Positions 41,151-64,000 of a DNA stretch of 64,000 nt are shown in pieces (positions within the stretch are counted from its first letter, which is position 1; each line of letters begins with the position of its first letter). Source of the DNA: Haplodiscus bocki (Eukaryota); contig OZ296656.1 in NCBI GenBank assembly GCA_965655095.1, forward strand, positions 83,080,001 to 83,144,000, read 5' to 3'. The notes beneath the pieces are model-generated. The model worked only from the letters and a program-made list of their open reading frames with translations, did no database searches and was not told the DNA's origin. Made by a program: the position numbers and the translations under genes.

Positions 41151-42880
41151 TTAAATTGAAGAATTTTTAAGATCGATGTTGCGGTTTGTTTTGTACAAGT
41201 TCCTGGCTTATGACTCTGGTGTTATGAACAATTTTTTTTTTCAATTTTGTACCTCTTGGTCTTTTAGCCACGTCTGGGCCGTTCCAGCACATGTGTTTTG
41301 TGTGGTTAGGTTTTTGGCAGTGTGGACAGGGTGGGTGTATTTCTGCATTCAGTTTTTCAGTAGTTTTTTTCACTTTTTAATTACTGTTTTTTTACGAATG
41401 CGTTTCCGACATTCTTTAATAACATGTCCTGGTTTTTTGTAGTCTCGGCATATTGTTTGTTGCTATTCTACGTCTTGTGGTTGATATTGCTTACTTTCCG
41501 TCGTTGTTAAGGTTGCCATTGCGAGAATACGAGAATAGGTAATTCTCCAGCTGTTTTCAACCAAGTCATTTCGATTTTCGGTCTAGATGTGCAACTATTC
41601 GATCGTATGTGCCATTTTCTAGAAAAGCTAGGTTTAATGACCATTTCAGATGTGAGGGTATCTTTGCATACAGTAGACTGTCTATCATCTGCTGTGTAAG
41701 AGGTCTGAAAACTTGTTCAGCACATTCATTAGGTTTTTCAAGGAAAATTGATAGTGATTTCGTGTCGGGATCAAAAATGGCTCTATACCCTTTGTGTTTT
41801 GCTGTGACTTGTGATTCTGCTGCGACGTCCTTCCGTCAAAAAATGATGAGTAAGTGTTCAAGTGTCCGTTTATTGTTAACAGTTATGTTTCTAAATGCTT
41901 GCAGTGTTTTGTTTTGAAGGTGTGAATAGAAGTTGTTAGTTTTCATCGCTTCTGACGTTTCAGGATGCATTTTAAACATAATTTGAAAAAATCTTCAAAC
42001 AGTTCAAATTTCCTATTTTTTTGTCGTAGATTAACGTGTTTATTGTTGTTAGCTTGAACACTGCCGACGACGACTGAGGTCACTATTGGGATGCAATGCT
42101 TGCAGTAGCTTCAACAAGTCTGTTGATGGGGTTGCCCGATTGTAAGTTTTCTCTTTGCGGTGTTTGTACAACCATTAGCAATAGGTTGTCGGGTGAAATG
42201 TATGTAGCCGTGTTTTCTGCTTGAGTAAATTGGTGTGGTATTGGGTTCTTTTGATTTGGAATTGGTCCCGTGAGAAAATCAGGGATACTGTTTTGAGGGG
42301 CATTATGTCCCGTCACCATGTGATGAGCGTGCGCTCGCCGGTCAAAAATAGGTCTCAATGCCGGAAAGTTGCCGTTCTCGAAATTTTCAACAATACGAGT
42401 CTCAATATTTCTGTCTTGATCAACGTTCATATCTATTTGACTAGAAATTGACTTGAGCGGGTTGTTTCCATTATTCCCTGTGAAATTCTTTTGATCAGAG
42501 TTTCGGACCACAATAGAGGGTCATCGTCCTAGTGACTCTGTGATCGATCTCACAACCATTTCAACTCGAGGAATTTGTACATTGTTGATTGCTGTCAACA
42601 TTGCGTCATGCATACGATTTGCGACAGTCATAACAGCATTATCAACTGCTTTCCTTATTCTGTCTCCAATAATGTTTTCAAGATCGTGACATGCACTGTT
42701 TTCACCGAATATAATCCTTCCGATATTCTTAGGACAACTGTTGGTCTGACTTACCAAGGTCTCATTTTCTAATGCACTTGTTTTGCTATCCTTACCGATT
42801 TCAAAATCGTTTGAAGTCTCGTTCAACCGACTAAATTGTCTTTTGTGTTGGTGCTTCTTCTTCCGTGTGGAAACCTTTTT
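41150..42880 (-). pseudogene. gag: Element 2 gag remnant starting inside the 5' LTR
   Basis: VSTRKKKHQHKRQ start, DRRAHAHH-MVTG across the LTR/PBS junction, LLYAKIPSHLKWSLNLAFLENGTYDRI, zinc knuckle CPHCQKPNHTKHMC. Confidence 0.85.
42306..42318 (-). promoter_or_regulatory. Primer-binding site of element 2 (TGGTGACGGGACA)
   Basis: TGG directly follows the LTR end ...CATCACA. Homology with the 26544 LTR copy stops exactly here. Confidence 0.75.
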
Positions 42881-44896: not shown

Positions 44897-47800
44897 TATC
44901 AATTGTCGGGATCTTCATGGATTATTTGAAATGAAGATGACAGGAAAAGCGACACCTCAAATTGTCGAAAGGGCGTGAAGTGTTTTAGTAACGGCTTTAT
45001 GCACGATTGTTGTATATCATCAATTCTCAGGATCTTCATCGATTAAATGAAATGGAGATGACAGGAAAAGCGACACCTCAATTTGTCGAAAGGGCATGAA
45101 GTGTTTCAGCAACAGCTTTATATACGATTGTTATATATCATCAATTGTCAGGATCTTCATCGATTATTTGAAATGGAGATGACCGGAAAAGCTACACCTC
45201 AATTTGTCAAAAGGGCATGAAGTGTTTCAGTAAAAGTATTATCTACGGTTGTTGTATATCATCAATTGCCAGGATCTTCATCGATTATTTGAAATAGAGA
45301 TGACAGGAAAAGCGACACCTGCATTTGTCCAAAGGGCGTGAAGTGTTTCAGTAACAGCTTCATGCACGATTGTTGTATATCATCAATTCTCAGGATCTTC
45401 ATCGATTAATTGAATTTGAGAGGACAGGAAAAACGACACCTAAACGTGTCGAAAAGGCATGAAGAGTTTCAGTAACAGCTTTATATACGATTGTTGTATA
45501 TCATCAAAATTCAGGATCATCATCGATTATTTGAAATAGAGATGACATGAAAAGCGACACTTCAATATGTCGAAACGCCGTGAAGTGTTTCAGTAACAGC
45601 TTTATATAGGATTGTTGTATGTTATCAATTGTCAGCATCTTCATCGATTAATCGAAATGGAGATCACAGGAAAAGCGTCACCTCAATTTTGTCGAAAAGG
45701 CGTGAATTACCTCGGTAACAGCATTAATTACGATTGTTGTATATCATCAATTGTCAGGATCTTCATCGATTATTTGAAATGGAGATGACCGGAAAAGCTA
45801 CACCTCAATTTGTCAAAAGGGCATGAAGTGTTTCAGTAAAAGTATTATCTACGGTTGTTGTATATCATCAATTGTCAGGATCTTCATCGATTAATTGAAT
45901 TGGAGAGGACAGGAAAAACGACACCTAAACGTGTCGAAAAGGCATGAAGAGTTTCAGTAACAGCTTTATATACGATTGTTGTATATCATCAAAATTCAGG
46001 ATCATCATCGAATATTTGAAATAGAGATGACATGAAAAGCGAGACTTCAATATGTCTAAACGCCGTGAAGTGTTTCAGTAACAGCTTTATATAGGATTGT
46101 TGTATGTTATCAATTGTCAGCATCTTCATCGATTAATCGAAATGGAGATCACAGGAAAAGCGTCACCTCAATTTTGTCGAAAAGGCGTGAATTACCTCGG
46201 TAACAGCTTTAATTACGATTGTTATATATCATCAATTGTCAGGATCTTCATCGATTATTTGAAATGGAGATGACCGGAAAAGCTACACCTCAATTTGTCA
46301 AAAGGGCATGAAGTGTTTCAGTAAAAGTATTATCTACGGTTGTTGTATATCATCAATTGTCAGGATCTTCATCGATTATTTGAAATGAAGATGACAGGAA
46401 AAGCGACACCTCAAATTGTCGAAAGGGCGTGAAGTGTTTTAGTAACGGCTTTATGCACGATTGTTGTATATCATCAATTCTCAGGATCTTCATCGATTAA
46501 ATGAAATGGAGATGACAGGAAAAGCGACACCTCAATTTGTCGAAAGGGCATGAAGTGTTTCAGCAACAGCTTTATATACGATTGTTATATATCATCAATT
46601 GTCAGGATCTTCATCGATTATTTGAAATGGAGATGACCGGAAAAGCTACACCTCAATTTGTCAAAAGGGCATGAAGTGTTTCAGTAAAAGTATTATCTAC
46701 GGTTGTTGTATATCATCAATTGTCAGGATCTTCATCGATTATTTGAAATAGAGATGACAGGAAAAGCGACACCTGCATTTGTCCAAAGGGCGTGAAGTGT
46801 TTCAGTAACAGCTTCATGCACGATTGTTGTATATCATCAATTCTCAGGATCTTCATCGATTAATTGAATTTGAGAGGACAGGAAAAACGACACCTAAACG
46901 TGTCGAAAAGGCATGAAGAGTTTCAGTAACAGCTTTATATACGATTGTTGTATATCATCAAAATTCAGGATCATCATCGATTATTTGAAATAGAGATGAC
47001 ATGCAAAGCGACACTTCAATATGTCGAAACGCCGTGAAGTGTTTCAGTAACAGCTTTATATAGGATTGTTGTATATCATCATTTGTCAGGATCATCATCG
47101 ATTATATGAATTGGAGATGACAGGAAAAGAGACACCTTAATTTGTCGAAAGGGCGTGAAATGTTTCAGTAACAGCTTTTCATACGATTGTTGTTTATCAT
47201 CATTTGTCATTATCTTCATCGAATTTATGAAATGGAGATGACAGGAAAAACGACACCTCATTATGTCGAAAGAATGTGAAGTAAATCCGTAACAGCTTTA
47301 TATACGTTTGTTGTATATCATCAATTGTCGGGATCTTCATCGATTTTTGGAAATGGAGCAGACAGGAAAATCGGCACCTCAATTTGTTGATTGGGTGTGA
47401 AGTGTTTTACAAACAGCTTTATATACGATTTTTGTATTATATCAATTGTCAGGATCTTCAACGAAAACTTGAAATGGAGATGACAGGAAAAGAGACACCC
47501 TAATTTTTCGAAAGGGCGTGAAATGTTGAACAACAGGTTTTCATACGATTGTTGTAAATCATCATTTGTCAGGATATTCATCGATTATATGAAATGGAGA
47601 TGACAGGAAAAGAGACACCTCAATTTGTCAAAAAGGCATGAAGTGTTTCAGTAACAGCTTTATATACGTTTGTTGAGTATCATCATTTGTCATGATCTTC
47701 ACCGAATATTTGAAATGAAGATGACAGGAAAAGCGACACCTCATTTTGTCAAGAGGGCATGAAGTGTTTCAGTGACAGCTTTATATAGGTTTGTTGTATA

Positions 47801-48648
47801 TCATCAATTGTCGGGATCTTCATTGATTATTCGAAATGGAGATGATAGGAGAAGCGACACCTCATTTTTCGAAAGGGCTTGAAGTGTTGAGTAACAGCTT
47901 TTCATACGATTGTTGTATATCATCAATTGTCAGGATATTCATCGATTAATTGAAATGGAGCTGACTGTAAAAGCGACAACTCAATTTGCCCAAAGGGCAT
48001 GAAGTGTTTCGGTAACAGTTTTATATACGATTGATGTATATCATCAATTGTCAGGATCTTCAACGATTATTTGAAATGGAGATGACAGGAAAAGCAACAT
48101 CTCAATTTGTCAAAAAAGCATGAAGTGTTTCAGTAAGAGCTTTATATACGATTGCTGTATACCATCAATTGTCAGGATCTTCGTCGAATATTTGATATGG
48201 AGATTACAGGTAAAACGACACCTCAATATGTCGATAGGCTGTGAAGTGTTTGAGTAACAGCTTTAAAAACGATTGTTTTATATCATCAATTGTCAGGATC
48301 TTCATCAATTGTTTGAAATGGAGATAACAAAAAAGCGACACCTCTTTTTGTCGAAAGAATGTGAAGTGTTTTTGTAACAGCTTTATATACGTTTGTTGTA
48401 TATCATCAATTGTCGGGATCTTCATCGATTATTGGAAATGGAGAAAACAGGAAAATTGGCAACTCATATAGTTGATGGGTTGTGAAGTGTTTCACTAACA
48501 GCTTTATATACGATTGTTGTATTTTATCAACTGTCAGGATTTTCAACGAATACTTGAAATGGAGATGACAAGGAAAGAGACACCTTACTTAGTCGAAAGG
48601 TCGTGAAGTGTTTCAATAACAGCTTTTTATAAGATTGCTGTATAATAT
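44897..48648. repeat. Satellite array, ~121-bp monomer, ~31 copies, with a higher-order block
   Basis: Consensus ...ATCATCAATTGTCAGGATCTTCATCGATTATTTGAAATGGAGATGACAGGAAAAGCGACACCTCAATTTGTCGAAAGGGC.TGAAGTGTTTCAGTAACAGCTTTATATACGATTGTTGTAT... Confidence 0.97.
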
Positions 48649-50442
48649 TGTCGCAGCACACCTGCGAGACATGCGGCCAACCCTTACCGCAAGGAAAGCC
48701 AATCAATGCTTAGAAGAAACACAAACATTGACTGAACTCTCAATATAACTCTATTATGAATTTTAACTATTGTGCAGATATACGGATACGTATATATACG
48801 TATCCTTGACAACGCACATAAATATGGGTACGTATATATACGGAACCAAACTGACCCGAACTGGGACGGAACCGCTACGGAACAAACGAGTATTCACAGA
48901 GTAGTATTAATAGAATAGGTGCTATATTTATATTAATACAATTATTTAAATATTAGACATAAATCCACCTTTTCTGCAATGAAATCGAACCATGATTGAT
49001 TACTAGAAGTGCAGTTTAATTTCAAATTAGAAATAAATTGATGATGTACGTAGACTGACTGATTTCAAGTGTATTGACTCTAGGAGTGAATATTTCTTCC
49101 GTACGTGTTCCGTCGCTACTAGTCGGGTGACGTCACTACTATTATTACTCTGCCGCGCGGTAGTGATTCCGGAATCAATCCGGAATCACTCCTCATTTGA
49201 GCAAAGAATACGACCACTACTAGTGAATACGGAGCGATTCCGGAATCATTCCGGAATCTACTAGTGCTACTCGTATGAATGAGGAGTAAACTAGTAGTGC
49301 TACTAGTTTCTCCTCATTTCCAAAGATTAAGAACTAATGAGCTGCTGTTATTGATGAGGTGAGTGTGAGGGTGATGATTATTTATATTAATTAAAGTCAT
49401 GTTTTATCATATTTATTTTTTAATCCATTTTTACAATCAAGGAAACAATTTTCCTTTCCCATTTATGGAATAGTTTGTATAACTGTAAACAAAGGTGTCG
49501 GCGCGGGAATAGACACTTTGATGTCCATCTCTGACGGATTAGGACCGTCCATTTTCTATCGAAAGATGGAAAAAGGCGCGTCATATGAGGGAAGAGATGT
49601 ATGGAAGAGTTGTTTATTTCCCGCCAGAGTCGGCACTCTCACCTTTGATGCTATACTTTTCGACGGTACTTTTCCCTATTTGTACCTTGGCTTGGCGTGC
49701 AAACAATTATGTTTCCCGCCAGGAAAAAGTATAAATACGAGAAACGAAAGTACAACGTAAGAACTTTTTGGGGATTTTGACAGAACTTTACAGAACTTTT
49801 GAGAGCCATTCAAGTGAACTTTCAATAATTTCTCAAGAGCTTTTCAGAACCTTTTCGAAAACTCTTAGCAATTGTATTGAACCTTCTTCAGAACGAGTGT
49901 ACAATAATTTGTAACTGATAAGTACTGACAATATTTAGCCACTCTTTGCCTATTCTTCTTTTGTTCTTTATTTTCCTAACGCTAATACTGTAAACCTCCC
50001 ATTTGATTTTACAATAAAAAGACAATCAATTATTAATCGTCGAAAACGCTTTTCCATAGAATGGCAACCCGCAACAAAAGAAAACTGGCAGCTTTGAATA
50101 AGGAAAACTGTGAGGAACATCCCAGGAATGTTTTTGCATCAACCTCAAATGTTCTTAGATCACAGGAGGACTATATAACTCAATTTTCCGAGAAAAATGA
50201 GAGAAGAATCACCAAAAAGTTGTCACAAGAATTTAGCAGAACGGAAAATCGTATACTAGGTGCGCTAGCAAGACTTGATGACTTCCTCATGAACCCACTA
50301 CTGCAGGGCCACTCCGGAACCACTCCGGAGACGTCCCGGAATGTATTTAGTATTAACCAGGGAGCGAATGAGGATGACTCCAAGAGTGACCCTCATCCTG
50401 AAGCGGGCCTTCTCACCTCTGGCCGAGAGGATCGCCACGACA
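48649..50442 (+). repeat. 5' LTR of element 1 (TGTCG...CGACA; alternative end at 50484)
   Basis: 48649-50028 is repeated at 62624-64000. The end is inferred from CGACA|TGG and from the equivalent junction in element 2. Confidence 0.8.
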
Positions 50443-51709
50443 TGGCGACAGGAGTTCAGAGAGAGAGCACACAGGCGCACGACATGGTGACAGGAGTTAC
50501 AGAACAGACTCGCAACCAACGCGACATAATAACAGGAATTCACGAAGAAGTTATGTACTGCTCCCCTAGCACATCTTCCGGAAAACAGAAAAAGAACCGC
50601 TCTGCAAGTCAACCCTAATTTCGCAGCGAAAACACCCCTGCGACGATTGAGGCAGACCAAACTTTGTTGGCACTTCAGCAGTAAGCAAACAACAACAATT
50701 CTGCAAATTTCGATAACAATATTAACAGAATTTCCAAATTGCCAAAGTCACTTACGACAACGATGCCAACGTCTGATGGGAAATCTGAAAAGTTCGTTCT
50801 GTTTGAAGATCTGTTCCAAACGAGTCTCAAAATCCACAATCAATTGACAGAGGAGGACAGAATTAACTACTTCCATTCTCTCAAGAGGGGAGATGCATTA
50901 CAGACATTTGAAAACATTAATGGACCTACCCGAGAGATTCTGGGAGGAATTCTGGCAGTCTTTCGAAGGAAATATGTAAAACCCCAATCGATGGCGACAG
51001 CAAAACATAAATTCCAGAAATTGTCTTCAACCCAGCAAATCAAAAGTTAGTTGATCTTCTTGGCGAACTTCAAAAACTGGCCAAAGACGCATTCGGATTT
51101 GCTGCCCATACCATCATTGAACAATTCATATATGCCAAGATGCCACCGCAGCTGAAAAAGTCATTAAATCAGGCCCACTTGGAAAACGGCACATATGAAC
51201 AGATTGTGACACACCTAGAAAGGGAATTAGAACTAAATGGTTTGGAAGCCCCTGATGAGCTACAAATAAATACTGTGACCCACAATACTGTCAATGCAAA
51301 TGCTGACAGAACCAAACCAACGTGTCACTATTGTAAAAAAACAGGACATTATAAAAATCAGTGCCGGTTTTTGAAAAAACAACGAGAACAAACTGAAAAT
51401 AATCAAAATAATCCTGGAAACAAAAGCAGTGATGCCAACACCTCTAACCCAAACGGCAACGTCAACTATCCTAACAACAACAGCAGGAACAGTAACAGGC
51501 CCGAAAGAGAGCCAAAAACTGTTTACCCACCCTGTGAGACATGTGGTAAGACAAACCATTCCACGGAGAGATGCTATCATGGAGCCAATGCAGCCAATAG
51601 ACCGCCTCCCCGGCAGAGAAGACCGGAAAGACAAAATCAGGTCCAAGAAAGAGCTGTTCAAGATGACTCAAATGAAAATAGCCAGGCTGTAGCCCAGAAT
51701 TTAAACTGA
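50061..51709 (+). pseudogene. gag: gag (interrupted by stops and a frameshift)
   Basis: MATRNKRK start, DGKSEKFVLFEDLF capsid-like region, two CCHC knuckles CHYCKKTGHYKNQC and CETCGKTNHSTERC. Confidence 0.93.
50443..50497 (+). promoter_or_regulatory. Primer-binding sites TGGCGACAGGAGT (50443) and TGGTGACAGGAGT (50485), probably tRNA-Leu type
   Basis: Each follows CACGACA. The second matches 12/13 nt of TGGTGTCAGGAGT, the complement of the vertebrate tRNA-Leu(CAG) 3' end as recalled. The host tRNA was not checked. Confidence 0.7.
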
Positions 51710-51753: not shown

Positions 51754-54700
51754 GCAACTCATTTAACATTTCTACCAATCCCAGAGGTTGTCTGGCTGCA
51801 ACCCCAGGAGACCTATTTAAATAATATTCATAATGATTTGACTAATAAAACTCATAAACATACCCACACGCCCAAACAGAAAAATGATGTAGAAGCACAA
51901 ACGTCGCCAATAAAGGAAACCTCATCTCAAGTATCCGGATCCGACACGGCATCACTCCTCGAAACCCAAACCAGGAGCATACCAGTACAGTGCCCCAATG
52001 ACTCCAAGAAACAACAAAGCGAAATCCAACGAAATGAAATAAGTTTGACAACCCATGGCAATTGAGATGATAATATTTCTCCTCCTCAAATTACAACTTC
52101 TCAAATTCAAGAACAACTTGTGAGAGACGAAAATACTAATGAACTCTATATGCCGCTATCCTCCACAATCGTCTTGAAACGAAAGAAAGAAATGTTGTAT
52201 GTCCCTCTGGATTTCGATAATGGCTGAACAATAGATGCCCTTGTTGACTCGGGAGCCTATGTTAGTGCAATAGCTCAGAAAGAATCGGACAGAATTCAAC
52301 AACAAGCCCCGTCTAACATCCTAAAAATTGATGAACCACCTAATTTTCAAATCCAAGTAGCAAATGGCCAGTTAGAGAAGCCCACAGCAACAGCCACACT
52401 TAAATTTGACATTGGTGACCACATCTTTGCCGAACATTTTGTAGTGATGAAGAATCTGACAGGACCCATTATAGGATTGCACTTCATGAGACAGAACAGT
52501 GTGGTCATTGATACCACTCAAGGCCTCATCAACTTCCCTCATCTAACAATGCAAGTCAAAAGTGCATCGAGCCAAGCAAGTGCTAAACCTCAACCTGTTC
52601 TCATTCATGATAGTATAACAATACCACAGATGACAACGAAAACATTTAGAGCATTTGTTGACCACTCATCGGAATTGAAGACAACAGGCACCGTGACCCC
52701 AGTGGAAAAATTCACAGAAGCCGCGAGCCTAATCATATCCCATTCAATGTCAACAATAATTGACAGGAAAATAGCAGTCACAGTAACTAACACAACGGAA
52801 TCACCCTACACAATCAACAAGAACACACAAATTGCCGAAATCTCCGTAGTCACTCCGGAGCAATCCAAGTTTATTAAACCAGTGGACATGGCAATTCTTA
52901 GTATGATTCCTGAAGGTGACCCAGACCTGGTTATTTACCTGACTGAGCTACTCAGAACGAATAAACCAGAGCAACAAAACAATACTTTCTGGTTTCCGAC
53001 ACCCAAATATCCTGGCAACACAGAAGATCATACCCCGATTCAAACACGAATCCTCACAGAACTCTGTGAATTGCAACGAAGGGAAAAACTAAATCCAAAA
53101 GATGATAGTGAATCACGAGCAGAACTCCTCAAAAGATTTGATTGGACAGACACACTGCTCACGGAAACTGAGAAACAAGCAGTTGAAGACATTCTAGTTG
53201 AATATCATGATATATTTGCTAGACACAGAATGGATATTGGAATGAACACAGAATTCAAGGTAAAACTCAAACCAAAAGATGATAAAGCTGTTTACAGCCA
53301 GAGCTTACCAATGCCGATCCATCTGAAAGAAGACTTAATTGTTGAGCTCGCCCTTATGCACAAATATGGGATCATCACAGTGTTACCATTCTCAAAATAT
53401 GCAAGCCCCATATTTGCACAGAGGAAACCCAACGGAAAATTACGGCTCCTTTTGGATCTCAGGAAAATGAACACCCTGACTGCAGATGATTATACTATTA
53501 ATAACCATCCAGTTAGCACTTTGTCAGACGCAGCACAACACCTGGCAGGAAAGTCACTATTATGTAAGCTTGATTGCTCCCAAGCGTATCACTGCTTGCA
53601 GATGGTGGACCAACGCTCAGTGGAAATGCTTGCATTCAATTTTGCTAGCAGAACTTTTGCCTACAGAAGACTTGCACAAGGTCTTAGCAGATCTGTGTCT
53701 GCTTTTTCGAGCTTCATGCGCGAGTACTTGGACCCAGTTGTCAAAGCTGACCAATGTGCTCAATACGTGGATGACATTGTAATTGCAGCCAATAATGCTA
53801 CGGATCTCACCCGGAACATTCGGGCAGTCTTCAAGTGCATTCGCGATGCAGGATTAAAACTGACAATTGAAAAGTGCCATTTTGGAGTCAGACAGGTTGA
53901 ATTCCTAGGCAGAACCATTTCATCCGAGGGAGTATTACCACAATCTCATAAACTTCAAAACTTTTTGAACAAATTGAGATTCCCTAAATCCAAGAAGGCC
54001 TTGCAGCGCTTCATAAATTACTACAGAAATTATATTCTCAGAATGGCTGAAAAGCTCAACCCATTTTATAAACTTTTGAAAGCAGAAGTCCCAATCAACA
54101 TCACCTCAAAATTGAAAGAAACCTTCGATTCAGTGAACAAAGCACTGAGTGATGCGTGTCAACTAGCACTCAAGCAACCCATTCCTGAAAAACAGTTAGT
54201 CTTATCGACCGATGCAAGTTTCAGGAGTGCAGGGTATGCCCTTATGATTGAAGACAACCCGGTTCAAAAAATCCATTCAAAAAGGAAAACGTATGCACCA
54301 GTCGCGTTTGGATCAGAAGTCTTTTCTCCCGCACAGCTTGAGATGTCAATTTACTCGAAGGACTTTTTGGCAATATACATGGCAATTCTTGAATTTGCGC
54401 ACATTCTGTGGGAAACATCAAAACCGACGATTGTATTGACGGACAACAAATCAGTTACCCGATTTTTCCAGACGAAAGCCATTCCACCATCCCTGTGGAA
54501 CGCATGTGATTATGTGTTGCAGTTCAACTTCAAAATAGCACATGTAGCTGGTTCAGTTAACACAGCGGCTGGGCTGACTTTTGCTTCATGATTGGAATTG
54601 AGAGTCATGGAAAAGATCCATCTCAAAATCCGAGAAGATGTCCAAACAACACCCATAGAGGTGTCAACATCTTCCTCAGATGTCGCAGATGAAGAACAAT

Positions 54701-56593
54701 TCTTTTTCACGCAATCAGATAGTCAGGACGAAACTGAAGAACGAATCCTACAAAGGAAAGAACAATCTCAGAAAAATGCGGCAGAATGGGTAACAAACCA
54801 GGAACTATCCTCAATGAAGCCAAGCATCAATGAATTTACAAAGATCGACGGAAACATTACGTCGTACTCCATCAATGGAATTAAAGCAAGCGCACGAATA
54901 CGAGTAGAGCAAGATGCCGATCTAGTATTGAAGAACCTCAAACTCAAAACACTTGGCCAACCACATGATGATATGCTATTAGCAACGGATAGACGATACA
55001 AACACTACAAAGCAAATGAGGATCGCATTATCCTCAAGGATGGACTCCTATTCCGGAAATACTACGGAGAAGCTGGCAGCGTCAAATACTACCAAATTCT
55101 CATACCGAAGCAGCTTGTTAATGAAGTACTACGGAATCTCCACGGAGAATTTAGTAAACATCCTGGAATTACCAAGACGATAATTACATACAGAGAAAAA
55201 TATTATTACCCAAATATGGCTCAACTAATCAGGGAGTGGGTCTTGTCGTGTGAGCAATGCCTTAGAGAATCACCAATTAATCCCTGACTCACCCGCCCTC
55301 CCCTGCAAAATCCGAACGAGTACACTACTGCGCCAGAAGACGCCATGCAAATCGATTTGTTGTCGGGATAACCGCCATCTGGTGGCTATGAAAACATTGT
55401 GACAGCCATTGATATGTTTTCCCGCTATTCATTTGCATACCCGACATCACACCAGGACGCCGAAACAGTCGCTAAAGTGATAATTAACATCATGACTAAG
55501 CACGTCTACTTACTCACAACACTTATCTCAGATAAAGGTACAGCTTTTACTTCAATTGTAATTGAAGAAGTGGCCGGCGTCCTTGGCCTTACTCTAAAGC
55601 ACGCCACCACCAAGCACGCTCAAAAAATTGGGTTACTTGAGCGATCTCACGCGTCAATCAAACAAGCATTGAAGATTGAGACAGGCGAGCGGAGATCATT
55701 GTGGCACAAATATGTGAGCATTGCGGTCCTTAAGTACAACACATCTTATCACGCGAGCATCGGCTGTGAGCCGAGCAGAGTATTTCATGGACGAATTCCT
55801 TATAATATCCTTGATTTAAAAATGGGTATTCGTCCACAGGAAATTCCCCCTCCAGACTCGCAGATCGCCCAAGATGTGCTTGAACAGACAGAAACAATTT
55901 TCCAGGACGTCCGAAAAAATACCATGCAAGCCTATATCAAATACAAAGCGTAATATGATAGGAAAGCAAATGCCTCAAAATTGAAAAAAGCCGATTACGT
56001 CTTCATACTACAGCCGAAAGCAGACCACCAAGGGAGTAAAAATCCCTTCACAGACTTTCGCTGGATTGGGCCATACATTATTGAAAAGTTATTACCCAAC
56101 AATAATTATCTGGTACGCAAAATCGGCACTGACAAGACACAAATCCTTCATCGAATGAGGCTGCGACAATTCACACCCCGCCAACCGCTATCAGACATAC
56201 CAGTCACACAACGCGAGTGGCAACCAGACCCGGAAGTTGTCATTACACACGATGACTTATACGCCAGGCCGTGGGAATGTGAATATGACGAGCCAATATT
56301 TGACAGCGATTACAATAATTTGGCGGCACCCAGTCGACCCGAGATTACAATAAGATCCGAACAGACAGCTGATGAAATGAGGAACACTCCTGGAATCACA
56401 CCAGAAAAATCCCCAGAAATTATTCCTCAGCCAGACGGATCATATGACGGAAGAGACGTCGATCGCGACACGCAGCCTGATGCGGATATGAGTGTAGAGC
56501 AACTTGACCCCATGCCTACCAACCCCCGCAGCTCAAAATACGATCTCCGAAAATAACCCGAAGCCAAATTGTAACGACGACTACAGATACTGA
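51706..56593 (+). pseudogene. pol: pol: aspartic protease, reverse transcriptase, RNase H, integrase (several premature stops)
   Basis: LVDSGA; YASPIFAQRKPNGKLR; KLDCSQAYH; YVDD; TDASFRSAG; HGEFSKHPG...CEQC; QIDL...SDKGTAF...GLLERSH; WIGPY. Confidence 0.97.
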
Positions 56594-56604: not shown

Positions 56605-56960
56605 AACTTTTCCCGGAACACATACGTATATTTTCCGGAAGCCCCAGGAATATGTCATGCAGAAAGCCAACATATGCTTCCAAGCACTTAAATGGCCCCC
56701 CGAAGTAACTAATGAGCACCACAGACAGAGCAACCACAATTTTGGCACTTAAAGCACTGGGAATCGGATCCTCATCAAATATATCCTCAAGCGATACATG
56801 GAATGCTTCCGGAACAATTCCGGAACCATTCTGGAAAATCCACCAAAATTGGATTCCGGAACTATTCCGGAACCATTCCGGAAAATTTACCAAAATCCAA
56901 TTCCGGATACACTACGGAATACATATGGATACCCCGAGTAGTGTGAGGTTAATTCCTGGA
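56605..56960. repeat. Cluster of TTCCGGAA palindromes between the converging pol and antisense-gene 3' ends
   Basis: About 8 exact or near copies, several at 11-bp spacing (56807/56818, 56854/56865/56876). Confidence 0.8.
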
Positions 56961-57076
56961 TAGCGACGCGTTTCCTACTCATTTCACCCATGCAAAAGAC
57001 GGCTATGATAAATAAATTCAGACTATTTTTAAAATTCTAAAATGTGAGAAGTTTATACAAATATACAGTTAGATTG

Positions 57077-60000
57077 TTACTGGTACCCCCCTTGGAATAC
57101 TGGGGCATTACGGCGATTGCGACCACTTCTCCTCGCCCCCGACTTCTCAAAGCTTTTCTGAAGAGCAGACTCAAATGATGGACGGCTAACAGACGGGCTG
57201 GAAACTGAAAACTGTTTTTTCGAGACACCAGGACTCGCTGATGATTGCCTCTTCTTGCCTTTCCCGGGACTTGACCGACTACAACAAGGGAAACCAAGCT
57301 TCTCGTGCTCAGCTACATACTGCACGTCCCCCACCTCAACAACATAAGAGATGCGGACAGTTGTTTGGGGCGCACTCTCACCAACAGCTGATGAGGCAAC
57401 GGTTTCAGCACTGAACCACCGCTCCCGTGTATCTTTTACCGCCTTCCTCTGGGACAAAATCTTCTCGCGGCAAGACTTCAAATCAATGATAACGGGGCCA
57501 GCTTCAACATCAACAGCTCCCCAAGGGTCAAATCTAGCGCTGTTTCGGACAGCATCTGCGGCAGTGACAGCAGTGTTTAGCATGCTGATCCCAGTCTCAG
57601 AGAAAAAATTTCTCTGTGTGAACGAGGGATGACACACAAAGTCCTGCACACACGCCACTGCCCCCTTCCCCTTCTCATGGTCGATCGCAACCCCATCCAG
57701 CGACACAGTAAAAAGGGGATGCAGCTCCGAAGGACCTTTTACCACTAGTGCTTTCAATTGAAAGATCTAAAGCAGCACATGTGTTAAATCATGAGACTAT
57801 CAGAAAAATTCAGAAGCACAAAATACCAACTTTGTGCAAATTCCGTCGAGAACGAAAACTGGGCTGATTGCAGAAGGCAAACACACTGTTGATTGGAGCA
57901 CGAGATTTATGGCTGCTTGTTTCCACCTGTCGCTCTTCGCGCACAAAAGAGTGGAATTCGGCCTTTGCAGGCTCGTTCTCTGATCCCCTCACCCAGCCAA
58001 GTTCAAGCAGCCCATGTAACAATTGTCCAAAGAGATGGAAAGCGGAATAGTCGTCGCCCCCAATCACAGAAACAACTGAGCCCCTGGCCAATTGGAGAAC
58101 GCGCAGCAACTGTCGAGAGAATGGTGCTCACGAGATCCTCAAGGAAACGACGACAGTCCCTACGGAATTCTTTGCGGAGGAAGCTGCTGTTGACTTTCTC
58201 AAGGGACGATAACAGACGTGTCCCTTCCAGAAAGTGCTCCTCAGGAATTGCACCAAAGCAATGATTTGGTAGCATGTATGCCTCCCACTTCTCAATCACG
58301 GGCAAATCATTACTCCGCTTCACCTTCTGCAAGAGACAATACACAAATCGCGAGAGTTCCCTGAATGCCAAGCACCCATAGTCGGCGCGCCCAGAGTTCA
58401 GTTCGGTGAAGTTGTGTGCAACTGAAACAACACAAACAACGTGACACGAGCATGATGAGAATTGGACCCGCCCTTCCCAAAAGCAGACTACCAAATGAGG
58501 ATCAAACTGGGAGTGATACCCAAATTTCTTAGTTCGTCCCGTGGAATTGAAGAGAGGACTAGCAGTGATACTAAAAACTCCTAGTTCATCATGACCGGGA
58601 ATTACGCTCTGAAATAAAACTCAGCAGCCCACACGAGTCCCCCAACCACCAGAAAGGAGGCCTAGACAATGCCCCACGGTCATAAAAGTGAAAACGCCGT
58701 GAATATACCAACTGTCGCAAATGAGGAAACCAGGAACATTGCCACAATTTTTCCTGGAATCCCGGCCAACTTTTCCGGAATGTATACGTACCAACGTGAG
58801 CTAGATGAGGAAGTGTAAGAAGCGGGACTTACAGATTTCGAGAATCAGATGGAACAGGCGGAATTTGCTGCGGGCCATCTGATCGATATAGAAATAGCCA
58901 TCGATTCCCTTCTTCTAAAAGGAAAACAGCAAGATGAAGGAGTGGAAATTGCAAATGAAATAAACCTGCAGAATGAAATATACCACTAAGCTGTCATCGT
59001 CAGTCTTCCTACCAGTCTCCTTGAGGTACACCACGATGAGAGGCCACACTCCCACGATGTTGCTGACGACCTCAACAAGAGACGGCATCGACATGTCTCC
59101 AGTGATGATGGCACAGCGAAGACTCGTTCTAGACATCATCCAATCGCGATGTTCCGCACCCTTTAGTCGCGTGACGATGAATTCCGTCCTTGAGAAGGGA
59201 TCCAAACACCCAAAGACGGAAGAGGACACCTTCTGTAAGCATCGTTTCAGGAGACGCAAGTCAAAAATGGGATACTCCACCAGCTTGTGCGAGTACCCAC
59301 TTCCCAAATACTCCTTGTACGTGTCAGCCAGCACATGCGACCCGCCAGAAATCGCAACAAGGGACGCCGAACTACCCACTGCAGCCACAACTTACCCGAG
59401 CACTGCTACATCGTGTGTAGCATCAACTGTGAAACGGTCGACAACATCCACAGCAACCCGACGGAAACTGCCCTTCTCCCACGTTCTCATGAAGGCCCAC
59501 AGTGACTCGCCACGCTCCTCAAATTCAAGGCCATAGAAATGATGAGCCTTTGCCCACCCAACAACCCGTGACAAAATTCGGGGCAGCATTCCAGTAATGA
59601 TAATTGACTAAAAGCAAAACAACAATGTGAATCAGGAATGAGACGAAGAGGTTCCGGAAATCTACGGAACCTATCAAAACTTCGTCTCGTGTCCAGGCAA
59701 CTTCACGCTTCACTGGCCCAGCGGTTAGCACAAACTGCGCCCACAGTTTCTCGATGAGACCGTAGCTGCCTCCCATCTTCAACCCATCTACCAGGCAGGA
59801 CACATTCGTCAGGACTGGCAACTGAGGGTCGATCACACCAGCTTCGTCAGAGATCAAGTCCTCTGCAAACGGATGCTCTGGATCCCGTACTACAAGAGGA
59901 CCCTTCTGAATCTTCTCCCTCCGCCGCTCCAGGTCATCTTCAGTCAAGGGATTTCCTTGAAAATCCAGCACGCGCCACCCAGGTGTTTCAAGAAGCAAAC

Positions 60001-61562
60001 GCTGGTCACGGGCAAAGTGACGACGTCCCTGAGAATGGCGCAACTTTTCATGGTGCCCATGGGTGAGCACGGACACGTCCTTTCGGCACAACCGACAATA
60101 AAAGTTGCTGGGCAAATTCGCAGCATCTAATGGCCCTGTCACAAAAAACCTGCCCAGCTCCGTTGCCGCGTAAACCTTTTTCATCCGGTAAATTTTATTC
60201 GACAGAACTTTCCGGCGCCCCTGACTTGCATCTGTCTTGTCTCCGCTGGTGTCCGGCGTCTCAATTCTCTGCAAACTCTGTGAGGGTCCCTGCTTTAGCC
60301 GGTCCAGCACTTCGTTCAGCTCTACCAACAGAAAAATGGAAATTATGGACTGACACAATGCTACTGAACCCAAAAAGGCGGAAAATACTAACTGTTCATC
60401 AAAGGAGACAGCAACTGAGCCTTCTCCTCTTCGCACACGGAGCAACACAAGGGCACCATTTGATGCCCAGTGGCACGAATCATAGTGGCAGCGGGATCGG
60501 TCACGAACTGATCTGTAAAAGAAAGAAACATGGTAAGAACTTGGAGCCAACTTGGAACAATACTAGTAAATTCCTCATTCAAGCACAAGATTTACCATCA
60601 TCAAATGCCCGCTCTAATAGCTCCCTGCTTCGACCTCTACTTTGGACAGCCTCAAGGGCATCATGCTGGGACCTCCCAACCAATGGTACCAGGCTCCTGG
60701 TAACAACAATGTGACGCCCCCTCAACTGCCCATCAGTCTCCACGCCAGTCGACACTTCTTCATTTCCGGATACTCCCGGAATCGTCTCCGCATCAACTAG
60801 AAATAACACAGAGAATGAGCCACTGATATGAAAAAACCTGCAATGTTGAATAGAGAGCAACCAACTCTCAAGAACAGCCGTGAGAGGACTCTTTGGAGCG
60901 CGTTTCGTCTGACTCTTCTTTCTCTCGGCTTCTTCTTCTGCTGAAGTCGGCGCGCCAACCTCAAACTCGGAACCAGACACATCTGCCCGAGACAATTCAG
61001 GCTCATCACCCTGAACCACTGGTTCTCCTGAGCGATTGTACACTAAAACACAACAACCTCACGAAGTCATCTTCATACTCGAGAGCGCGCGCAGCAAAAC
61101 TAGCCCAAATAGAATTCATTGACTGGCCAGCAAAGAAATTCTAAATAGCAAGGCTAATGGCAATCGATGAAGATTTGAAAACTCACATTGTGGAAGGTGA
61201 GCGGTGTCAACGACACCCTCGAACACATTCTTCCCGAGTCTCTTGCGGCGAAGGATCTCTGAGAGCGTGAATACCTCAGACTCATACCCAGAAAGCCCAA
61301 CTTCGTCCACGCCACCAACAACATCAACGTCCTCGTCCTCGTCCTCCTCATCGGCTTCAGTGCCCGCCTCGGTCTCGCACAAACCGCCTACTTCAATTGG
61401 TCCCTCCAGACCTCCCGCAGGACTCTCCTCGCCTCTCTCTCCAGCAACACTTTCTTCGAAGACAACAACAGGGGAAGGGGAACCAACAGCTTGAACAGCT
61501 GATTTATTGTCCACTTGGGACGAATTGATCTCCGCAAGGAAGATGACACTGTCCTCGGACAT
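57077..61562 (-). CDS. Spliced antisense gene, 9 exons, ~1,170 aa: acidic/disordered N-terminus, CX2CX16HX5H zinc finger, hAT-transposase-like body; slightly damaged in this copy
   Basis: Predicted introns 61186-61043, 60865-60797, 60595-60513, 60392-60322, 59674-59608, 58983-58915, 58832-58422 and 57830-57767 join the - strand ORF fragments in the correct phase. Defects: one donor reads ATAGGT, one stop at 59392, one frameshift near 58065. Confidence 0.85.
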
Positions 61563-61992
61563 ATTTTACGAATTGCTTCGAAGAACGTGGCTAATAAGCT
61601 ATTACATGGTGGATTTATAATTTCATTCACGAAATTCATTATTATTTTAATTTTTAACATGACCGATTTGTCTGCCAGCAATAACGTCATCATTACCATC
61701 ATCATCATATTTTCAAGGATACATTGAGGAAACAAACTCAATTCTTCCTCATTCCCAAAACTCAATCCTTGATTTGTTTACAAGTTATCATTTTCTGTTA
61801 TACCGCCAAATACTCGACTTGAGCAGCTAGAGTGATACCGCGGGAACTTCAAAGTATCTCCCGCTTGGCGACGCATGCCGACTGACTTCTTATTTCAACC
61901 ATCACACTTTTTAAAGTCGCTTCATTGATATCAGCAGCTCAAACTTTTTCTCTAATTTTCTCATTTTTACAAACTCTGAGCAAATCATCATC

Positions 61993-62723
61993 ATGAATTT
62001 ATCTCTGGATTCCTGCTCCACAGAGTCTGACGTTTTTTACGTGGAGCAAACATCAACAGAGGGAAGCCCAATCCGAAATAATACCCCTGCGATCCTCAAT
62101 TCGACGGAGATATCCGGAGCCATGGAGAGAGAGAGATCATCACAATCTCCTCTGTCGCCTCTCCGGTACCACGAATTGTGACGCTGAACTCTGACTCGAA
62201 TGACCCCACAATGCCCTATGGGTTTGGCAATCAGCAGCCGATCGTGCCACCCAGTCTCAACGACCTCAATCTGCCGCCCAACCCCTTCAATGTACTGGCA
62301 ACGATAGCCGTAATCCGAGTGGATGATGAATACAGCCCCCAGTCACCGGAGCCAACCATCCCATCCCCAATTTCAACGCCTCCAATGAATGTCAGTACCA
62401 TTGAAGGCTGGGGGATACAACGCATACCACGACTGACAATGACACATTTTATACAGATGACGAGCCCAGAAGAGTCTACTGGCATATTCCGTCGAGCGAC
62501 ACCTTCGACTCTAACGAGCCAAGAAATGTGTCTGTCGCCTCGAGCCTTCTTCTACTCCACCACCTCCACCGCGACAGAAGAGAAGACTAAGCATGGGGAT
62601 GTCTTTTCCTCAAAAGGGAGGAGTGTCGCAGGACACCTGCGAGGCATGCGGCCAACCCTTACCGCAAGGAAAGCCACCCAATGCTTAGAAGAGACACAAA
62701 CATTGACTGAACTCTCAATATAA
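61993..62723 (+). pseudogene. Extra sense ORF (S/T/P-rich, ~235 aa, frameshifted) crossing the PPT and ending in the 3' LTR
   Basis: MNLSLDSCSTESDVFY...PIVPPSLNDLNLPPNPF...; a candidate final frame reads QKRRLSMGMSFPQKGGVSQDTCEACGQPLPQGKPPNA*. Confidence 0.55.
62612..62623 (+). promoter_or_regulatory. Polypurine tract AAAAGGGAGGAG
   Basis: Purine run immediately 5' of the TGTCGCAG start of the 3' LTR. Confidence 0.9.
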
Positions 62724-64000
62724 CTCTATTAAGTATATACACTATTATGTGTACTCTATTATGTATATATACGTATCCTTAACAACGCACATAAATATGG
62801 GTACGTATTTATACGGAACCGAACTGACCCGAACTGGGACGGATCCGCTACGGAACAAACGAGTATTCACAGAGTAGTATTAATAGAATAGGTGCTATAT
62901 TTATATTAATACAATTATTTAATTATTAGACATAAATCCACTTTTTCTGCAATGAAATCGAACCATGATTGATTACTAGAAGTGCAGTTTAATTTCAAAT
63001 TAGAAATAAATTGATGATGTACGTAGACTGACTGATTTCAAGTGTATTGACTCTAGGAGTGAATATTTCTTCCGTACGTGTTCCGTCGCTACTAGTCGGG
63101 TGACGTCACTACTATTGTTACTCTGCCGCGCGGTAGTGATTCCGGAATCAATCCGGAATCACTCCTCATTTGAGCAAAGAATACGACCACTACTAGTGAA
63201 TACGGAACGATTCCGGAATCATTCCGGAATCTACTAGTGCTACTCGTATGAATGAGGAGTAAACTAGTAGTGCTACTAGTTTCTCCTCATTTCCAAAGAG
63301 TAAGAACTAATGAGCTGTTGTTATTGATGAGGTGAGTGTGAGGGTGATGATTATTTATATTAATTAAAGTCATGTTTTATCATATTTATTTTTTAATCCA
63401 TTTTTACAATCAGGGAAACATTTTTCCTTTCCCATTTATGGAATAGTTTGTGTAACTGTAAACAAAAGTGTCGGCGCGGGAAAAATCACTTTGATGTCCA
63501 TCTCTGACCGATTAGGACCGTCCATTTTCTGTCGGAAGATGGAAAAGGCGCGTCCTATGAGGGAAGAGATGTATGGAAGAGTTGTTTATTTCCCCCCAGA
63601 TTCGGCACTCTCACCTTTGATGCTATACTTTTCGACGGTACTTTTCCCTATTTGTACTTTGACTTGGCGTGCAAACAATTATGTTTCCCGCCAGGAAAAA
63701 GTATAAATAGGAGAAATGAAAGTACAACGTGAGAACTTTTTGGGGATTTTGACAGAACTTTACAGAACTTTTGAGAGCCATTCAAGTGAACTTTCAATAA
63801 TTTCTCAAGAGCTTTTCAGAAACTTTTCGAAATCTCTTAGCAATTGTATTGAACCTTCTTCAGAACGAGTGTACAATAATTTGCAACTGATAAGTGCTGA
63901 CGATATTGAACCAGTCTTTGCCTATTCTTCATTTGTTCTTTATTTTCCTAACGCTAATACTGTAAACCTCCCATTTGATTTTACAATAAAAAGACAAGCA
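62624..64000 (+). repeat. 3' LTR of element 1 (partial)
   Basis: Direct repeat of 48649-50028. Confidence 0.97.

What the first reader, a model, noticed from the sequence alone, without database searches (positions are those of the whole stretch)
57077..61562. Gypsy retrotransposon carrying a 9-exon antisense gene that looks like a repurposed hAT transposase
Seen: the scattered - strand ORFs between pol and the 3' LTR are joined by 8 introns (144, 69, 83, 71, 67, 69, 411, 64 nt). Donors are GTGAGT, GTTGGT, GTAAAT, GTTAGT, ATAGGT (mutated), GTATAT, GTAAGT and GTTGGT, with pyrimidine-rich YAG acceptors. Every junction keeps the frame (phases 1,1,1,1,0,0,1,0), giving ~3.5 kb of coding sequence. 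Known: introns survive reverse transcription when antisense to the genomic RNA; antisense ORFs in this position exist in plant Tat-lineage elements (Grande, RIRE2, Retand), and HTLV-1 has a spliced antisense gene. Inference: the finger FYCRLCRKDVSVLTHGHHEKLRHSQGRRH, the segment FYGLEFEERGESLWAFMRTW (where hATs have the first catalytic Asp) and AEFHSF...RNLHKIFQL (where hATs have FPNL..L...SxxxERxFS) follow hAT transposase order but lack the catalytic motifs. This suggests a DNA-transposon gene captured with its introns and kept as an accessory DNA-binding, anti-silencing or targeting factor. I know of no described animal Gypsy with such a gene.
Basis: partly seen in the sequence, partly recalled or inferred. 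Interest (0 to 1): 0.92.

Follow-up and report, generated by a model that had tools for sequence, protein, structure and literature searches.

The report
Intron-bearing antisense gene inside Gypsy retrotransposon
A family of Gypsy retrotransposons in an animal genome carries, backwards between pol and the 3' LTR, a real nine-exon gene for a 1173-residue zinc-finger protein that is kept by selection as strongly as the element's own integrase; the copy in this window is broken, and I could not confirm that the gene descends from a hAT transposase.

Summary
The anatomy is real.

It has an in-frame TAA in exon 6, a private 11-nt frameshifting deletion in exon 8, and a mutated donor 5. Its LTRs are 95.7% identical.

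Thirty full-length copies (of at least 320 in the genome) support the gene:
- GT-AG is kept in 27-30 of 30 copies at every intron.
- The 1173-codon frame holds 0-5 scattered stops per copy.
- Private substitutions are even across codon positions. Shared ones are 0.16/0.12/0.33 per site at positions 1/2/3 and 0.30 in introns.
- Pairwise dN/dS is 0.33, against about 1 in shifted frames.
- Shared indels are about 7-fold rarer in exons than in introns.

Lineages only 27-57% identical in protein keep the same gene, intron positions and antisense placement next to pol.

The hAT origin is not supported by Pfam, PDB searches, profile-profile comparison with hAT profiles from the same genome, or AlphaFold with Foldseek and VIA. 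No RNA data were available.

The closest analogues are the antisense accessory ORFs of plant Retand and Grande elements. Other first-stage notes flag the same cargo elsewhere in this genome.

The parts
48649..50025 (+). 5' LTR. This is the part that can be matched to the 3' LTR inside the window. The true LTR end lies further right and was not mapped here.
   Evidence: Aligns with 62624-64000 at 95.7% identity over 1377 nt (repeats). All other copies' LTR matches start at 48649 / 62624.
50061..51709 (+). gag region, as ORFs 50061-50618 and 51140-51709 with a CCHC knuckle.
   Evidence: ORFs. zf-CCHC hit is weak, E 0.0097.
52444..56556 (+). pol in the order reverse transcriptase, RNase H, integrase zinc domain, integrase core, integrase C-terminal. 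It is split into four ORFs in this copy.
   Evidence: Pfam hits RVT_1 3.6e-23, RT_RNaseH 2.7e-13, Integrase_H2C2 6.3e-15, rve 1.9e-7, Integrase_p58_C 5e-4.
61187..61562 (-). Exon 1 (376 nt), with the ATG at 61562-61560. Encodes an acidic, low-complexity N-terminus.
   Evidence: ATG kept in 26/30 copies. Donor GTGAGT in 27/30.
60866..61042 (-). Exon 2 (177 nt).
60596..60796 (-). Exon 3 (201 nt). Holds the CGA codon (codon 240) that reads TGA in 10 of 30 copies.
60393..60512 (-). Exon 4 (120 nt).
59675..60321 (-). Exon 5 (647 nt). Encodes the Cys2-His2-like zinc finger (FYCRLCRKDVSVLTHGHHEKLRH). Its donor is mutated to AT at 59674-59673 in this copy only.
   Evidence: 1410 database ORF fragments match this exon.
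58984..59607 (-). Exon 6 (624 nt), one of the two most conserved parts together with exon 8. Interrupted here by an in-frame TAA at 59394-59392.
   Evidence: 490 representative clusters match it. The AlphaFold model shows a helix, three strands, then helices.
58833..58914 (-). Exon 7 (82 nt).
   Evidence: Open in 28/29 other copies.
57831..58421 (-). Exon 8 (591 nt here, 605 nt in most copies). Has a private 11-nt frameshifting deletion at 58067/58066 and a private 3-nt deletion near 58261.
   Evidence: dN/dS 0.20.
57077..57766 (-). Exon 9 (690 nt) with the TAA stop at 57079-57077. Encodes a basic, Ser-rich C-terminal tail.
   Evidence: TAA kept in 27/30.
57052..57057 (-). TATAAA hexamer 20 nt after the stop. 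A possible polyadenylation signal variant, by inference only.
61563..62623 (-). Region upstream of the antisense ATG, up to the 3' LTR. Presumed 5' UTR and promoter of the antisense gene, by inference only.
   Evidence: All three... in-frame stops lie upstream of the ATG. Shared substitutions in 61563-61992 are 0.247 per site, slightly below the intron level.
62624..64000 (+). 3' LTR, cut off by the end of the window.

Best explanation
A roughly 15-kb Ty3/Gypsy LTR retrotransposon of an animal genome carries an element-encoded accessory gene between pol and the 3' LTR, on the opposite strand. The gene has nine exons and eight short GT-AG introns. In the family's usual form it encodes 1173 residues: an acidic N-terminal region, one Cys2-His2-like zinc finger, a conserved core of about 600 residues with no recognisable fold, and a basic C-terminal tail.

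Because the gene is antisense to the genomic RNA, its introns are not spliced out of the RNA that is reverse transcribed, so every new copy inherits them.

Shown: the exon-intron structure, its conservation, purifying selection equal to that on integrase, and the same gene and placement in lineages down to 27-57% protein identity.

Inferred: the gene is transcribed from a promoter in or near the 3' LTR region, spliced by the host, and translated into a nuclear nucleic-acid-binding factor that the element needs to propagate. Candidate roles are regulation of its own transcription, escape from silencing, or integration targeting. This would be comparable to the antisense accessory proteins of plant Retand and Grande elements or HTLV-1 HBZ.

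The copy in this window is an inactivated relic with a stop, a frameshift and a dead donor.
For: Structure: exons, introns, donors and acceptors were verified.

Family: at least 30 full-length copies at 88-95% identity, all collinear from pol to the 3' LTR. An internal exon-6 probe hits 321 sites in the genome.

Splice sites: GT and AG are kept in 27-30 of 30 copies at all eight introns, and intron lengths are nearly constant.

Frame: the usual exon lengths sum to 3522 nt. Each copy has 0-5 scattered stops, and the terminal stop is shared by 28 of 30.

Selection:
- Private substitutions per site are 0.49/0.50/0.50 at codon positions 1/2/3 and 0.54 in introns.
- Shared substitutions are 0.164/0.118/0.325 at positions 1/2/3 and 0.302 in introns.
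- The integrase control gives 0.169/0.137/0.387.
- Pairwise dN/dS has a median of 0.33, falling to 0.25 in the most divergent quartile, against 0.98 and 1.26 in shifted frames.
- Shared indels: 8 in 3522 nt of exon against 15 in 978 nt of intron, and none of the intronic ones is a multiple of 3.

Deep conservation:
- Exon 6 finds 490 clusters at 50% identity.
- Divergent loci L031, L032, L048, L049 and L050 have the exons in the same order. L031, L049 and L050 also have RT, RNase H or integrase on the opposite strand just downstream.
- Read-through ORFs lose homology exactly at introns 5, 6 and 8. The intron-8 insert in P0277 starts with GTN and ends with CAG.

ATG is kept in 26/30 and TAA in 27/30 copies. 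The host is an animal, since Wnt genes are present.
Against: There is no transcript evidence. The only four public runs holding the sequence are contigs of unrecorded kind (the tool marks them '?') that also cover the introns, so I take them for DNA. None of the joints listed (15 of 176) matches a predicted junction.

No intron-less retrocopies were found with junction probes 5|6 and 7|8.

The protein has no detectable relative of known function, so the proposed nuclear, DNA-binding, pro-element role rests only on the zinc finger, charge distribution and analogy.

The N-terminal exons 1-4 are only weakly constrained (dN/dS 0.57).

All database relatives that I traced come from one assembly, which also holds a 100% identical exon-5 fragment and so probably represents the same species. 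The gene's range beyond this host is unknown.
Confidence: 0.8

Rival explanations
1. The cargo is a catalytically dead hAT transposase. On this reading, an intron-containing DNA-transposon gene landed in antisense orientation in an ancestral Gypsy and was kept as a DNA-binding accessory factor.
For: Domain order and spacing resemble hATs: a zinc finger, about 170 residues, then a helix plus three-strand meander (pLDDT 80-87), then about 390 mostly helical residues.

Language-model neighbours of exon 8 include FAM200-GTF2IRD2-like (0.90), Dimer_Tnp_hAT (0.89) and DUF4371 (0.85) clusters.

The zinc-finger region aligns with the BED-finger region of a hAT in hhalign, though only at E 0.48.

The genome is rich in hAT elements. 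An antisense, intron-bearing insert is what DNA-level capture would give.
Against: No Pfam hit to zf-BED, DUF659, hAT-like_RNase-H, DUF4371 or Dimer_Tnp_hAT for any intact natural exon, nor for natural ORFs spanning exons 8-9.

No PDB hit by phmmer or by profile.

hhalign against hAT profiles from the same genome gives E 0.31-0.64.

The atlas tool itself flags the exon-8 family call as probably wrong, and a divergent homologue gives unrelated neighbours. Exon 6 gives AAA/Cdc6-type noise.

The protein continues about 230 residues beyond where a hAT would end.
Confidence: 0.2
2. The ORF is a once-functional passenger, either a captured host gene or a nested transposon, that is no longer used. 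On this reading the apparent constraint is inherited from before capture, or is an artefact of how related the copies are.
For: There is no expression evidence. None of the 30 aligned copies is free of both stops and frame-shifting indels across all nine exons. The N-terminal third is weakly constrained.
Against: The constraint is measured on substitutions that separate Gypsy sub-lineages, that is, after capture. It equals that of integrase in the same copies.

Private, post-insertion changes are neutral, as expected for dead copies of a live family.

The gene persists in the same place in lineages whose proteins have diverged to 27-57% identity. A useless 4.5-kb passenger would not be expected to survive that.

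Shifted-frame controls give dN/dS near 1.
Confidence: 0.07
3. The antisense region acts mainly as RNA, for example as a regulatory or dsRNA- or piRNA-generating antisense transcript, and the protein is secondary.
For: Antisense transcripts of retroelements are known regulators, as discussed for plant elements in PMC7264820. Introns 1, 3 and 5 show fewer shared changes (0.12-0.16 per site) than the other introns, which hints at some non-coding constraint.
Against: The codon-position pattern, the low dN/dS in only one frame, conserved start and stop codons, and frame-sparing indels are signatures of selection on a protein.
Confidence: 0.05

Closest known systems
Antisense additional ORFs of plant Tat-lineage Ty3/Gypsy elements (Retand TRP28 ORFs, the Grande accessory gene, RIRE2)
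   Same: A long region between pol and the 3' LTR holds a conserved ORF antisense to gag-pol. The ORF is predicted to give a nuclear or DNA-binding protein with its own promoter, and is a lineage-defining feature (PMC11963269, PMC7264820).
   Different: Those elements are from flowering plants. Their ORFs carry the Transposase_28 (PF04195) or other named domains and are described as single ORFs; the two papers I read never mention introns.

Here the host is an animal, the gene has eight spliceosomal introns and 1173 codons, and no Pfam domain is found.
HTLV-1 HBZ and other retroviral antisense genes
   Same: A protein-coding gene on the minus strand of a reverse-transcribing element. In HTLV-1 it is transcribed from the 3' LTR and has a spliced form, and it encodes a nuclear regulator (my own knowledge; also cited in PMC11963269).
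   Different: HBZ is a small bZIP protein with a single intron in an exogenous retrovirus. Here there are nine exons, an unrelated zinc-finger protein and an endogenous Gypsy. Expression from the LTR is only inferred.
hAT transposases (Hermes, Ac, and the domesticated ZBED and GTF2IRD2/FAM200 group)
   Same: An N-terminal zinc finger is followed by a strand-rich segment and a long helical region with similar spacing. Language-model neighbours are weak.
   Different: No sequence, profile or structural match in any test run here. No DDE residues can be assigned. There is an extra C-terminal region of about 230 residues. The gene sits inside an LTR element, not between terminal inverted repeats.
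Extra ORF3 genes of bdelloid rotifer LTR retrotransposons
   Same: Animal LTR elements that have captured diverse additional genes downstream of pol (PMC5408684, abstract).
   Different: Per that abstract, those ORF3s are env-like, GDSL esterase/lipase or DEDDy exonuclease genes. I read only the abstract and outline and saw no mention there of a multi-exon antisense gene.

Membership tests
Ty3/Gypsy LTR retrotransposon | Two long terminal direct repeats flanking the internal region. | tested here: met
   48649-50025 against 62624-64000 is 95.7% identical. The 3' LTR is cut by the window end, so target-site duplications were not checked.
Ty3/Gypsy LTR retrotransposon | pol domain order: reverse transcriptase, then RNase H, then integrase. 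| tested here: met
   RVT_1, RT_RNaseH, Integrase_H2C2, rve and Integrase_p58_C are found in that order on the + strand.
Spliceosomal-intron protein-coding gene | GT-AG boundaries with pyrimidine tracts that restore one reading frame, conserved across copies. | tested here: met
   27-30 of 30 copies keep GT and AG at each intron. The frame is 1173 codons.
Spliceosomal-intron protein-coding gene | Exons are constrained as coding sequence and introns are not. | tested here: met
   Codon-position bias appears in shared changes only. dN/dS is 0.33 against about 1 in shifted frames. Shared indels are about 7-fold denser in introns.
Spliceosomal-intron protein-coding gene | Spliced transcripts exist. 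| not testable with these tools
   No RNA run holds the sequence. The laid runs are contigs of unrecorded kind, taken for DNA because they cover the introns, and show no predicted junction among the joints listed. No processed retrocopies were found.
hAT transposase superfamily | C-terminal hAT dimerisation domain (PF05699). | tested here: not met
   No hit at E up to 10 for exons 8 and 9, nor for the natural ORFs P0277 and L048:11570-12544 that span both. hhalign against a PF05699-region profile from 15 hAT loci of this genome gives E 0.64.
hAT transposase superfamily | RNase-H-like DDE catalytic core interrupted by an all-helical insertion domain. | tested here: inconclusive
   The exon-6 model has a three-strand meander followed by helices. 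However, there is no significant match to Hermes or any RNase-H fold. The exon 8-9 model has pLDDT 44.6 and is unusable. The full-length protein could not be folded.
hAT transposase superfamily | N-terminal BED-type zinc finger. | tested here: inconclusive
   A Cys-X2-Cys-X11-His-X4-His motif is present. There is no zf-BED Pfam hit. hhalign aligns it to a hAT's finger region at E 0.48.
hAT transposase superfamily | Terminal inverted repeats and 8-bp target-site duplications around the gene. | not tested
   The gene lies inside an LTR element. I made no search for inverted repeats flanking it.
Plant Retand-type antisense accessory ORF | Antisense ORF between pol and the 3' LTR. | tested here: met
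Plant Retand-type antisense accessory ORF | Transposase_28 (TRP28, PF04195) domain. | tested here: not met
   No Pfam hit of any kind.

The most novel reading that the evidence does not exclude
A whole clade of animal Gypsy retrotransposons depends on a third gene of DNA-level origin. On this reading, an intron-bearing gene, possibly from a hAT-like DNA transposon now diverged beyond recognition, was captured antisense and has co-evolved with gag-pol ever since. It would be expressed as a host-spliced antisense mRNA and would act as the element's own nuclear regulator or targeting factor. That would be the first multi-exon antisense accessory gene described in an animal LTR retrotransposon, and the protein would found a new family.
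Probability: 0.5. Interest if true: 0.85.

Novelty: new variant of a known kind. Interest (0 to 1): 0.72.

Why it matters
LTR retrotransposons are usually thought to need only gag and pol. Extra genes are rare. Env-like and enzymatic ORF3s are described in animals, and antisense ORFs in plants.

Here an animal Gypsy clade has kept a large, eight-intron antisense gene under selection as strong as that on integrase, through extensive diversification. This implies three things:
- A retroelement can stably carry spliceosomal introns by placing the gene on the strand that is not its genomic RNA.
- The element relies on a further protein of unknown fold.
- Standard transposon annotation, which looks for intron-less sense ORFs and Pfam domains, will miss such cargo.

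The gene gives a concrete handle for asking how retroelements acquire and use regulatory or targeting factors. It also supplies an abundant, diversified protein family with no known relatives.

Tried and rejected
1. RNA evidence. The look-up of sequencing runs found only four runs from one study, of unrecorded kind. Laid on 56800-62600, they are contigs that cover the introns too, so I take them for DNA. None of the joints listed (15 of 176) is a predicted junction. This says nothing about expression.

2. Processed retrocopies as indirect proof of splicing. 36-nt junction probes for exons 5|6 and 7|8, with up to 3 mismatches, gave 0 hits, while an internal exon-6 probe gave 321. This negative is uninformative.

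3. Pfam on every exon of the window copy, on intact natural exons, and on P0277 and L048 gave nothing meaningful.

4. PDB searches by phmmer and by profile gave nothing.

5. ESM Atlas neighbours. Exon 6 gave AAA/Cdc6-type noise. Exon 8 gave weak hAT-like leads that the tool flags as probably wrong. L048 exons 8-9 gave helical-repeat noise.

6. AlphaFold.
- The exon-6 domain reached pLDDT 65.6. Foldseek against PDB, VIA wide and VIA second look gave no significant match.
- P0277 (exons 8-9) reached pLDDT 44.6 and was not searched.

7. hhalign of a query-anchored family alignment against hAT alignments from the same genome gave E 0.31-0.64.

8. The search for homologous proteins.
- Exon 5 gave 1410 hits, and the 120 best listed were all unnamed ENA ORF fragments.
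- A hAT query gave only 6 hits.
- The L048 query gave 10.
- No annotated full-length protein was found.

9. PF27046 is not in the local Pfam library, so the Atlas lead could not be tested by HMM.

11. The full-length spliced protein could not be submitted to any tool. It has no contiguous reference, and I did not type it.

12. The stop shared by 10 copies at codon 240 looked like a flaw in the exon model. It is a CGA-to-TGA change at a CpG site.


Full report
THE ELEMENT

The window holds a Ty3/Gypsy LTR retrotransposon on the + strand. Its 5' LTR starts at 48649 and its 3' LTR at 62624. The 1377 nt that can be compared inside the window are 95.7% identical. Between them lie gag (50061-51709, weak CCHC knuckle) and pol (52444-56556). 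Pol has RVT_1, RT_RNaseH, Integrase_H2C2, rve and Integrase_p58_C in the Gypsy order. The host is an animal: its genome has Wnt genes, best E 9.5e-48.

CHECK OF THE OBSERVATION

I rebuilt the minus-strand model base by base.

The claim that every junction keeps the frame does not hold for this copy:
- Exon 6 contains an in-frame TAA (59394-59392).
- Exon 8 is 14 nt shorter than in most copies. A private 11-nt deletion at 58067/58066 shifts the frame, and a private 3-nt deletion lies near 58261.
- The ATAGGT donor of intron 5 is private to this copy. 26 of 30 copies read GTAGGT, and all contigs of other copies laid on the window carry the G at 59674.

With LTRs 4.3% diverged, this copy is an old, dead insertion.

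IS THE GENE REAL?

A DNA search of the host genome returned 30 full-length copies at 88-95% identity. All are collinear with the window from pol through the cargo into the 3' LTR. A 36-nt exon-6 probe hits 321 sites. I did not build a consensus; all statistics below are on alignment columns or on pairs of copies.

1. GT and AG are kept in 27-30 of 30 copies at each of the eight introns, and intron lengths are almost invariant.
2. The usual exon lengths (376, 177, 201, 120, 647, 624, 82, 605, 690) sum to 3522 nt, which is 1173 codons plus a stop. In that column-defined frame each copy has only 0-5 stops, nearly all private, and 28 of 30 share the terminal stop. The one stop shared by 10 copies is a CGA-to-TGA change at a CpG.
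3. Private substitutions, which mostly arose after insertion, are spread evenly: 0.49, 0.50 and 0.50 per site at codon positions 1, 2 and 3, and 0.54 in introns. Substitutions shared by two or more copies, which separate sub-lineages of the active family, are 0.164, 0.118 and 0.325 at positions 1, 2 and 3, and 0.302 in introns. The integrase ORF of the same copies gives 0.169, 0.137 and 0.387. The cargo is therefore as constrained as integrase.
4. Pairwise Nei-Gojobori dN/dS has a median of 0.33, falling to 0.25 in the most divergent quartile. The same columns read in the two shifted frames give 0.98 and 1.26. Exons 6-8 are the most constrained (0.20-0.23) and exons 1-4 the least (0.57).
5. 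Shared indels number 8 in 3522 nt of exon (three are multiples of 3) against 15 in 978 nt of intron (none is a multiple of 3).
6. ATG is kept in 26/30 and TAA in 27/30 copies.

Together these results show a protein-coding gene with real introns that was under purifying selection while the family was active.

DEPTH OF CONSERVATION

A full HMMER scan of 1.84 billion representative proteins with exon 6 found 490 clusters (329 at E 1e-10 or better) at 36-90% identity. All are short ORF fragments. Every one I traced comes from a single ENA assembly, which also contains a 100% identical exon-5 fragment and so is probably the same species.

Five divergent loci (L031, L032, L048, L049, L050) carry the exons in the same order at 27-59% identity. 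L031, L049 and L050 also carry RT_RNaseH, rve or RVT_1 on the opposite strand just downstream, which is the same architecture.

ORFs that happen to read through an intron (P0068, P0116, P0087, P0002, P0277, L048) lose homology exactly at introns 5, 6 and 8. The 26-residue insert at the exon 8/9 junction of P0277 begins with Val (GTN) and ends with Gln (CAG). So both the gene and its introns predate a deep radiation of this Gypsy clade.

WHAT IS THE PROTEIN?

By inspection, exons 1-4 are acidic and low in complexity. Exon 5 holds a Cys-X2-Cys-X11-His-X4-His finger. Exons 5-8 form the conserved core. Exon 9 ends in a basic, Ser-rich tail.

No exon matches any Pfam family. This holds for the window copy, for intact natural copies, and for the two natural ORFs that span exons 8 and 9 without interruption. 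PDB sequence and profile searches are empty.

AlphaFold results:
- Exon 6, folded with a 55-sequence alignment, gave pLDDT 65.6. The model has a helix, a three-strand meander (pLDDT 80-87) and then helices.
- Foldseek found nothing at E 0.001 or better; Hermes is rank 14 at E 0.78 and TM 0.22.
- The exon 8-9 ORF P0277 folded at pLDDT 44.6, all helical, and cannot be used.

TEST OF THE hAT IDEA

The genome has many true hATs. I built hAT alignments from 15 of those loci plus four hAT proteins and compared them by hhalign with a query-anchored alignment of the cargo family.
- The only aligned stretch in the full-length comparison is the zinc finger against the BED-finger region, at E 0.48.
- The exon 8-9 region against the hAT C-terminal profile gives E 0.64, and against full-length hATs E 0.31.
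- Language-model neighbours of exon 8 include FAM200-GTF2IRD2-like, Dimer_Tnp_hAT and DUF4371 clusters at 0.85-0.90. The tool flags that family call as probably wrong. A divergent homologue and exon 6 give unrelated neighbours.

What remains in favour of hAT is the domain order and spacing. I rate hAT descent at about 0.2. It is unproven, and it fails the one defining feature that could be tested cleanly (PF05699). It is not excluded, because the full spliced protein could not be folded or profiled against current Pfam.

MECHANISM

Shown: the structure, its inheritance with introns in every copy, and selection.

Follows from established retroelement biology: a gene on the strand complementary to the genomic RNA keeps its introns through reverse transcription.

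Inferred: transcription from a promoter between 61563 and the 3' LTR, or in the LTR itself; splicing by the host; a possible TATAAA signal 20 nt after the stop; and a nuclear nucleic-acid-binding role that benefits the element.

The closest analogues are the antisense ORFs of plant Retand and Grande elements, which occupy the same position and are predicted DNA binders (PMC11963269, PMC7264820), and HTLV-1 HBZ. The two plant papers I read do not mention introns in those ORFs. Three full-text literature searches found no description of such a gene in an animal LTR element.

LIMITS

- There are no RNA data, and no retrocopies of the spliced form were found.
- Other first-stage notes in this scan flag the same cargo on other pieces of this genome. 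They are not independent evidence.

Noticed in passing
window 61993-62723 (+): Two sense-strand ORFs (62 and 181 codons, in different frames in this copy) lie between the cargo's 5' end and the 3' LTR and run into it. Across 27 copies they carry only 0-3 stops each. Shared substitutions are 0.13/0.19/0.26 and 0.23/0.32/0.38 at codon positions 1/2/3. This may be a weakly constrained extra sense ORF, as another first-stage note (s1-359261) suggested.
   Followed up: partly
window 28000-42800 (- strand element); + strand 30885-31025, 31619-31729, 32448-32522: A second, heavily decayed Gypsy lies on the minus strand. An HMM of the cargo family gives collinear but sub-threshold hits on its opposite strand: the zinc-finger region at i-E 0.005, the others at 0.3-0.8. 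160 divergent family fragments give no tblastn hit at 1e-4. Hits recur about 3.6 kb further on (35214-35339, 36052-36135), suggesting an internal duplication.
   Followed up: partly
window 47000-48669: A tandem array of a 121-bp satellite (at least 12 units, 60-86% identical) runs right up to, and overlaps by about 20 nt, the start of the 5' LTR at 48649.
   Followed up: no
L049:12481-13722 (+): In one divergent element, a second degenerate partial copy of exons 8-9 (33% identity, 10 stops, intron 8 read through in frame) follows the first copy in tandem, between the cargo and integrase.
   Followed up: no
exon 3, codon 240 (window about 60631-60629): CGA reads TGA in 10 of 30 copies. This is a CpG transition and the only stop shared by many copies. 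It is either a recurrent deamination hot spot or a marker of a dead sub-lineage that was still copied.
   Followed up: partly
host genome (e.g. G000:C1:51727663-51727860 and about 25 further loci): A hAT family with identical Dimer_Tnp_hAT matches (47.9 bits) and 624-residue open frames occurs at many loci, which suggests a recently active hAT transposon in this genome.
   Followed up: no
introns 1, 3 and 5 of the cargo (window 61186-61043, 60595-60513, 59674-59608): These three introns show about half the shared substitutions of the other introns (0.12-0.16 against 0.22-0.50 per site). This hints at extra non-coding constraint, such as splicing enhancers, or signals on the sense RNA.
   Followed up: no
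window 27495-27694: A run of 200 N, either an assembly gap or masked. Left untouched.
   Followed up: no
host genome: Only about three Wnt loci were detected. One is an apparently intron-less 452-residue open frame.
   Followed up: no
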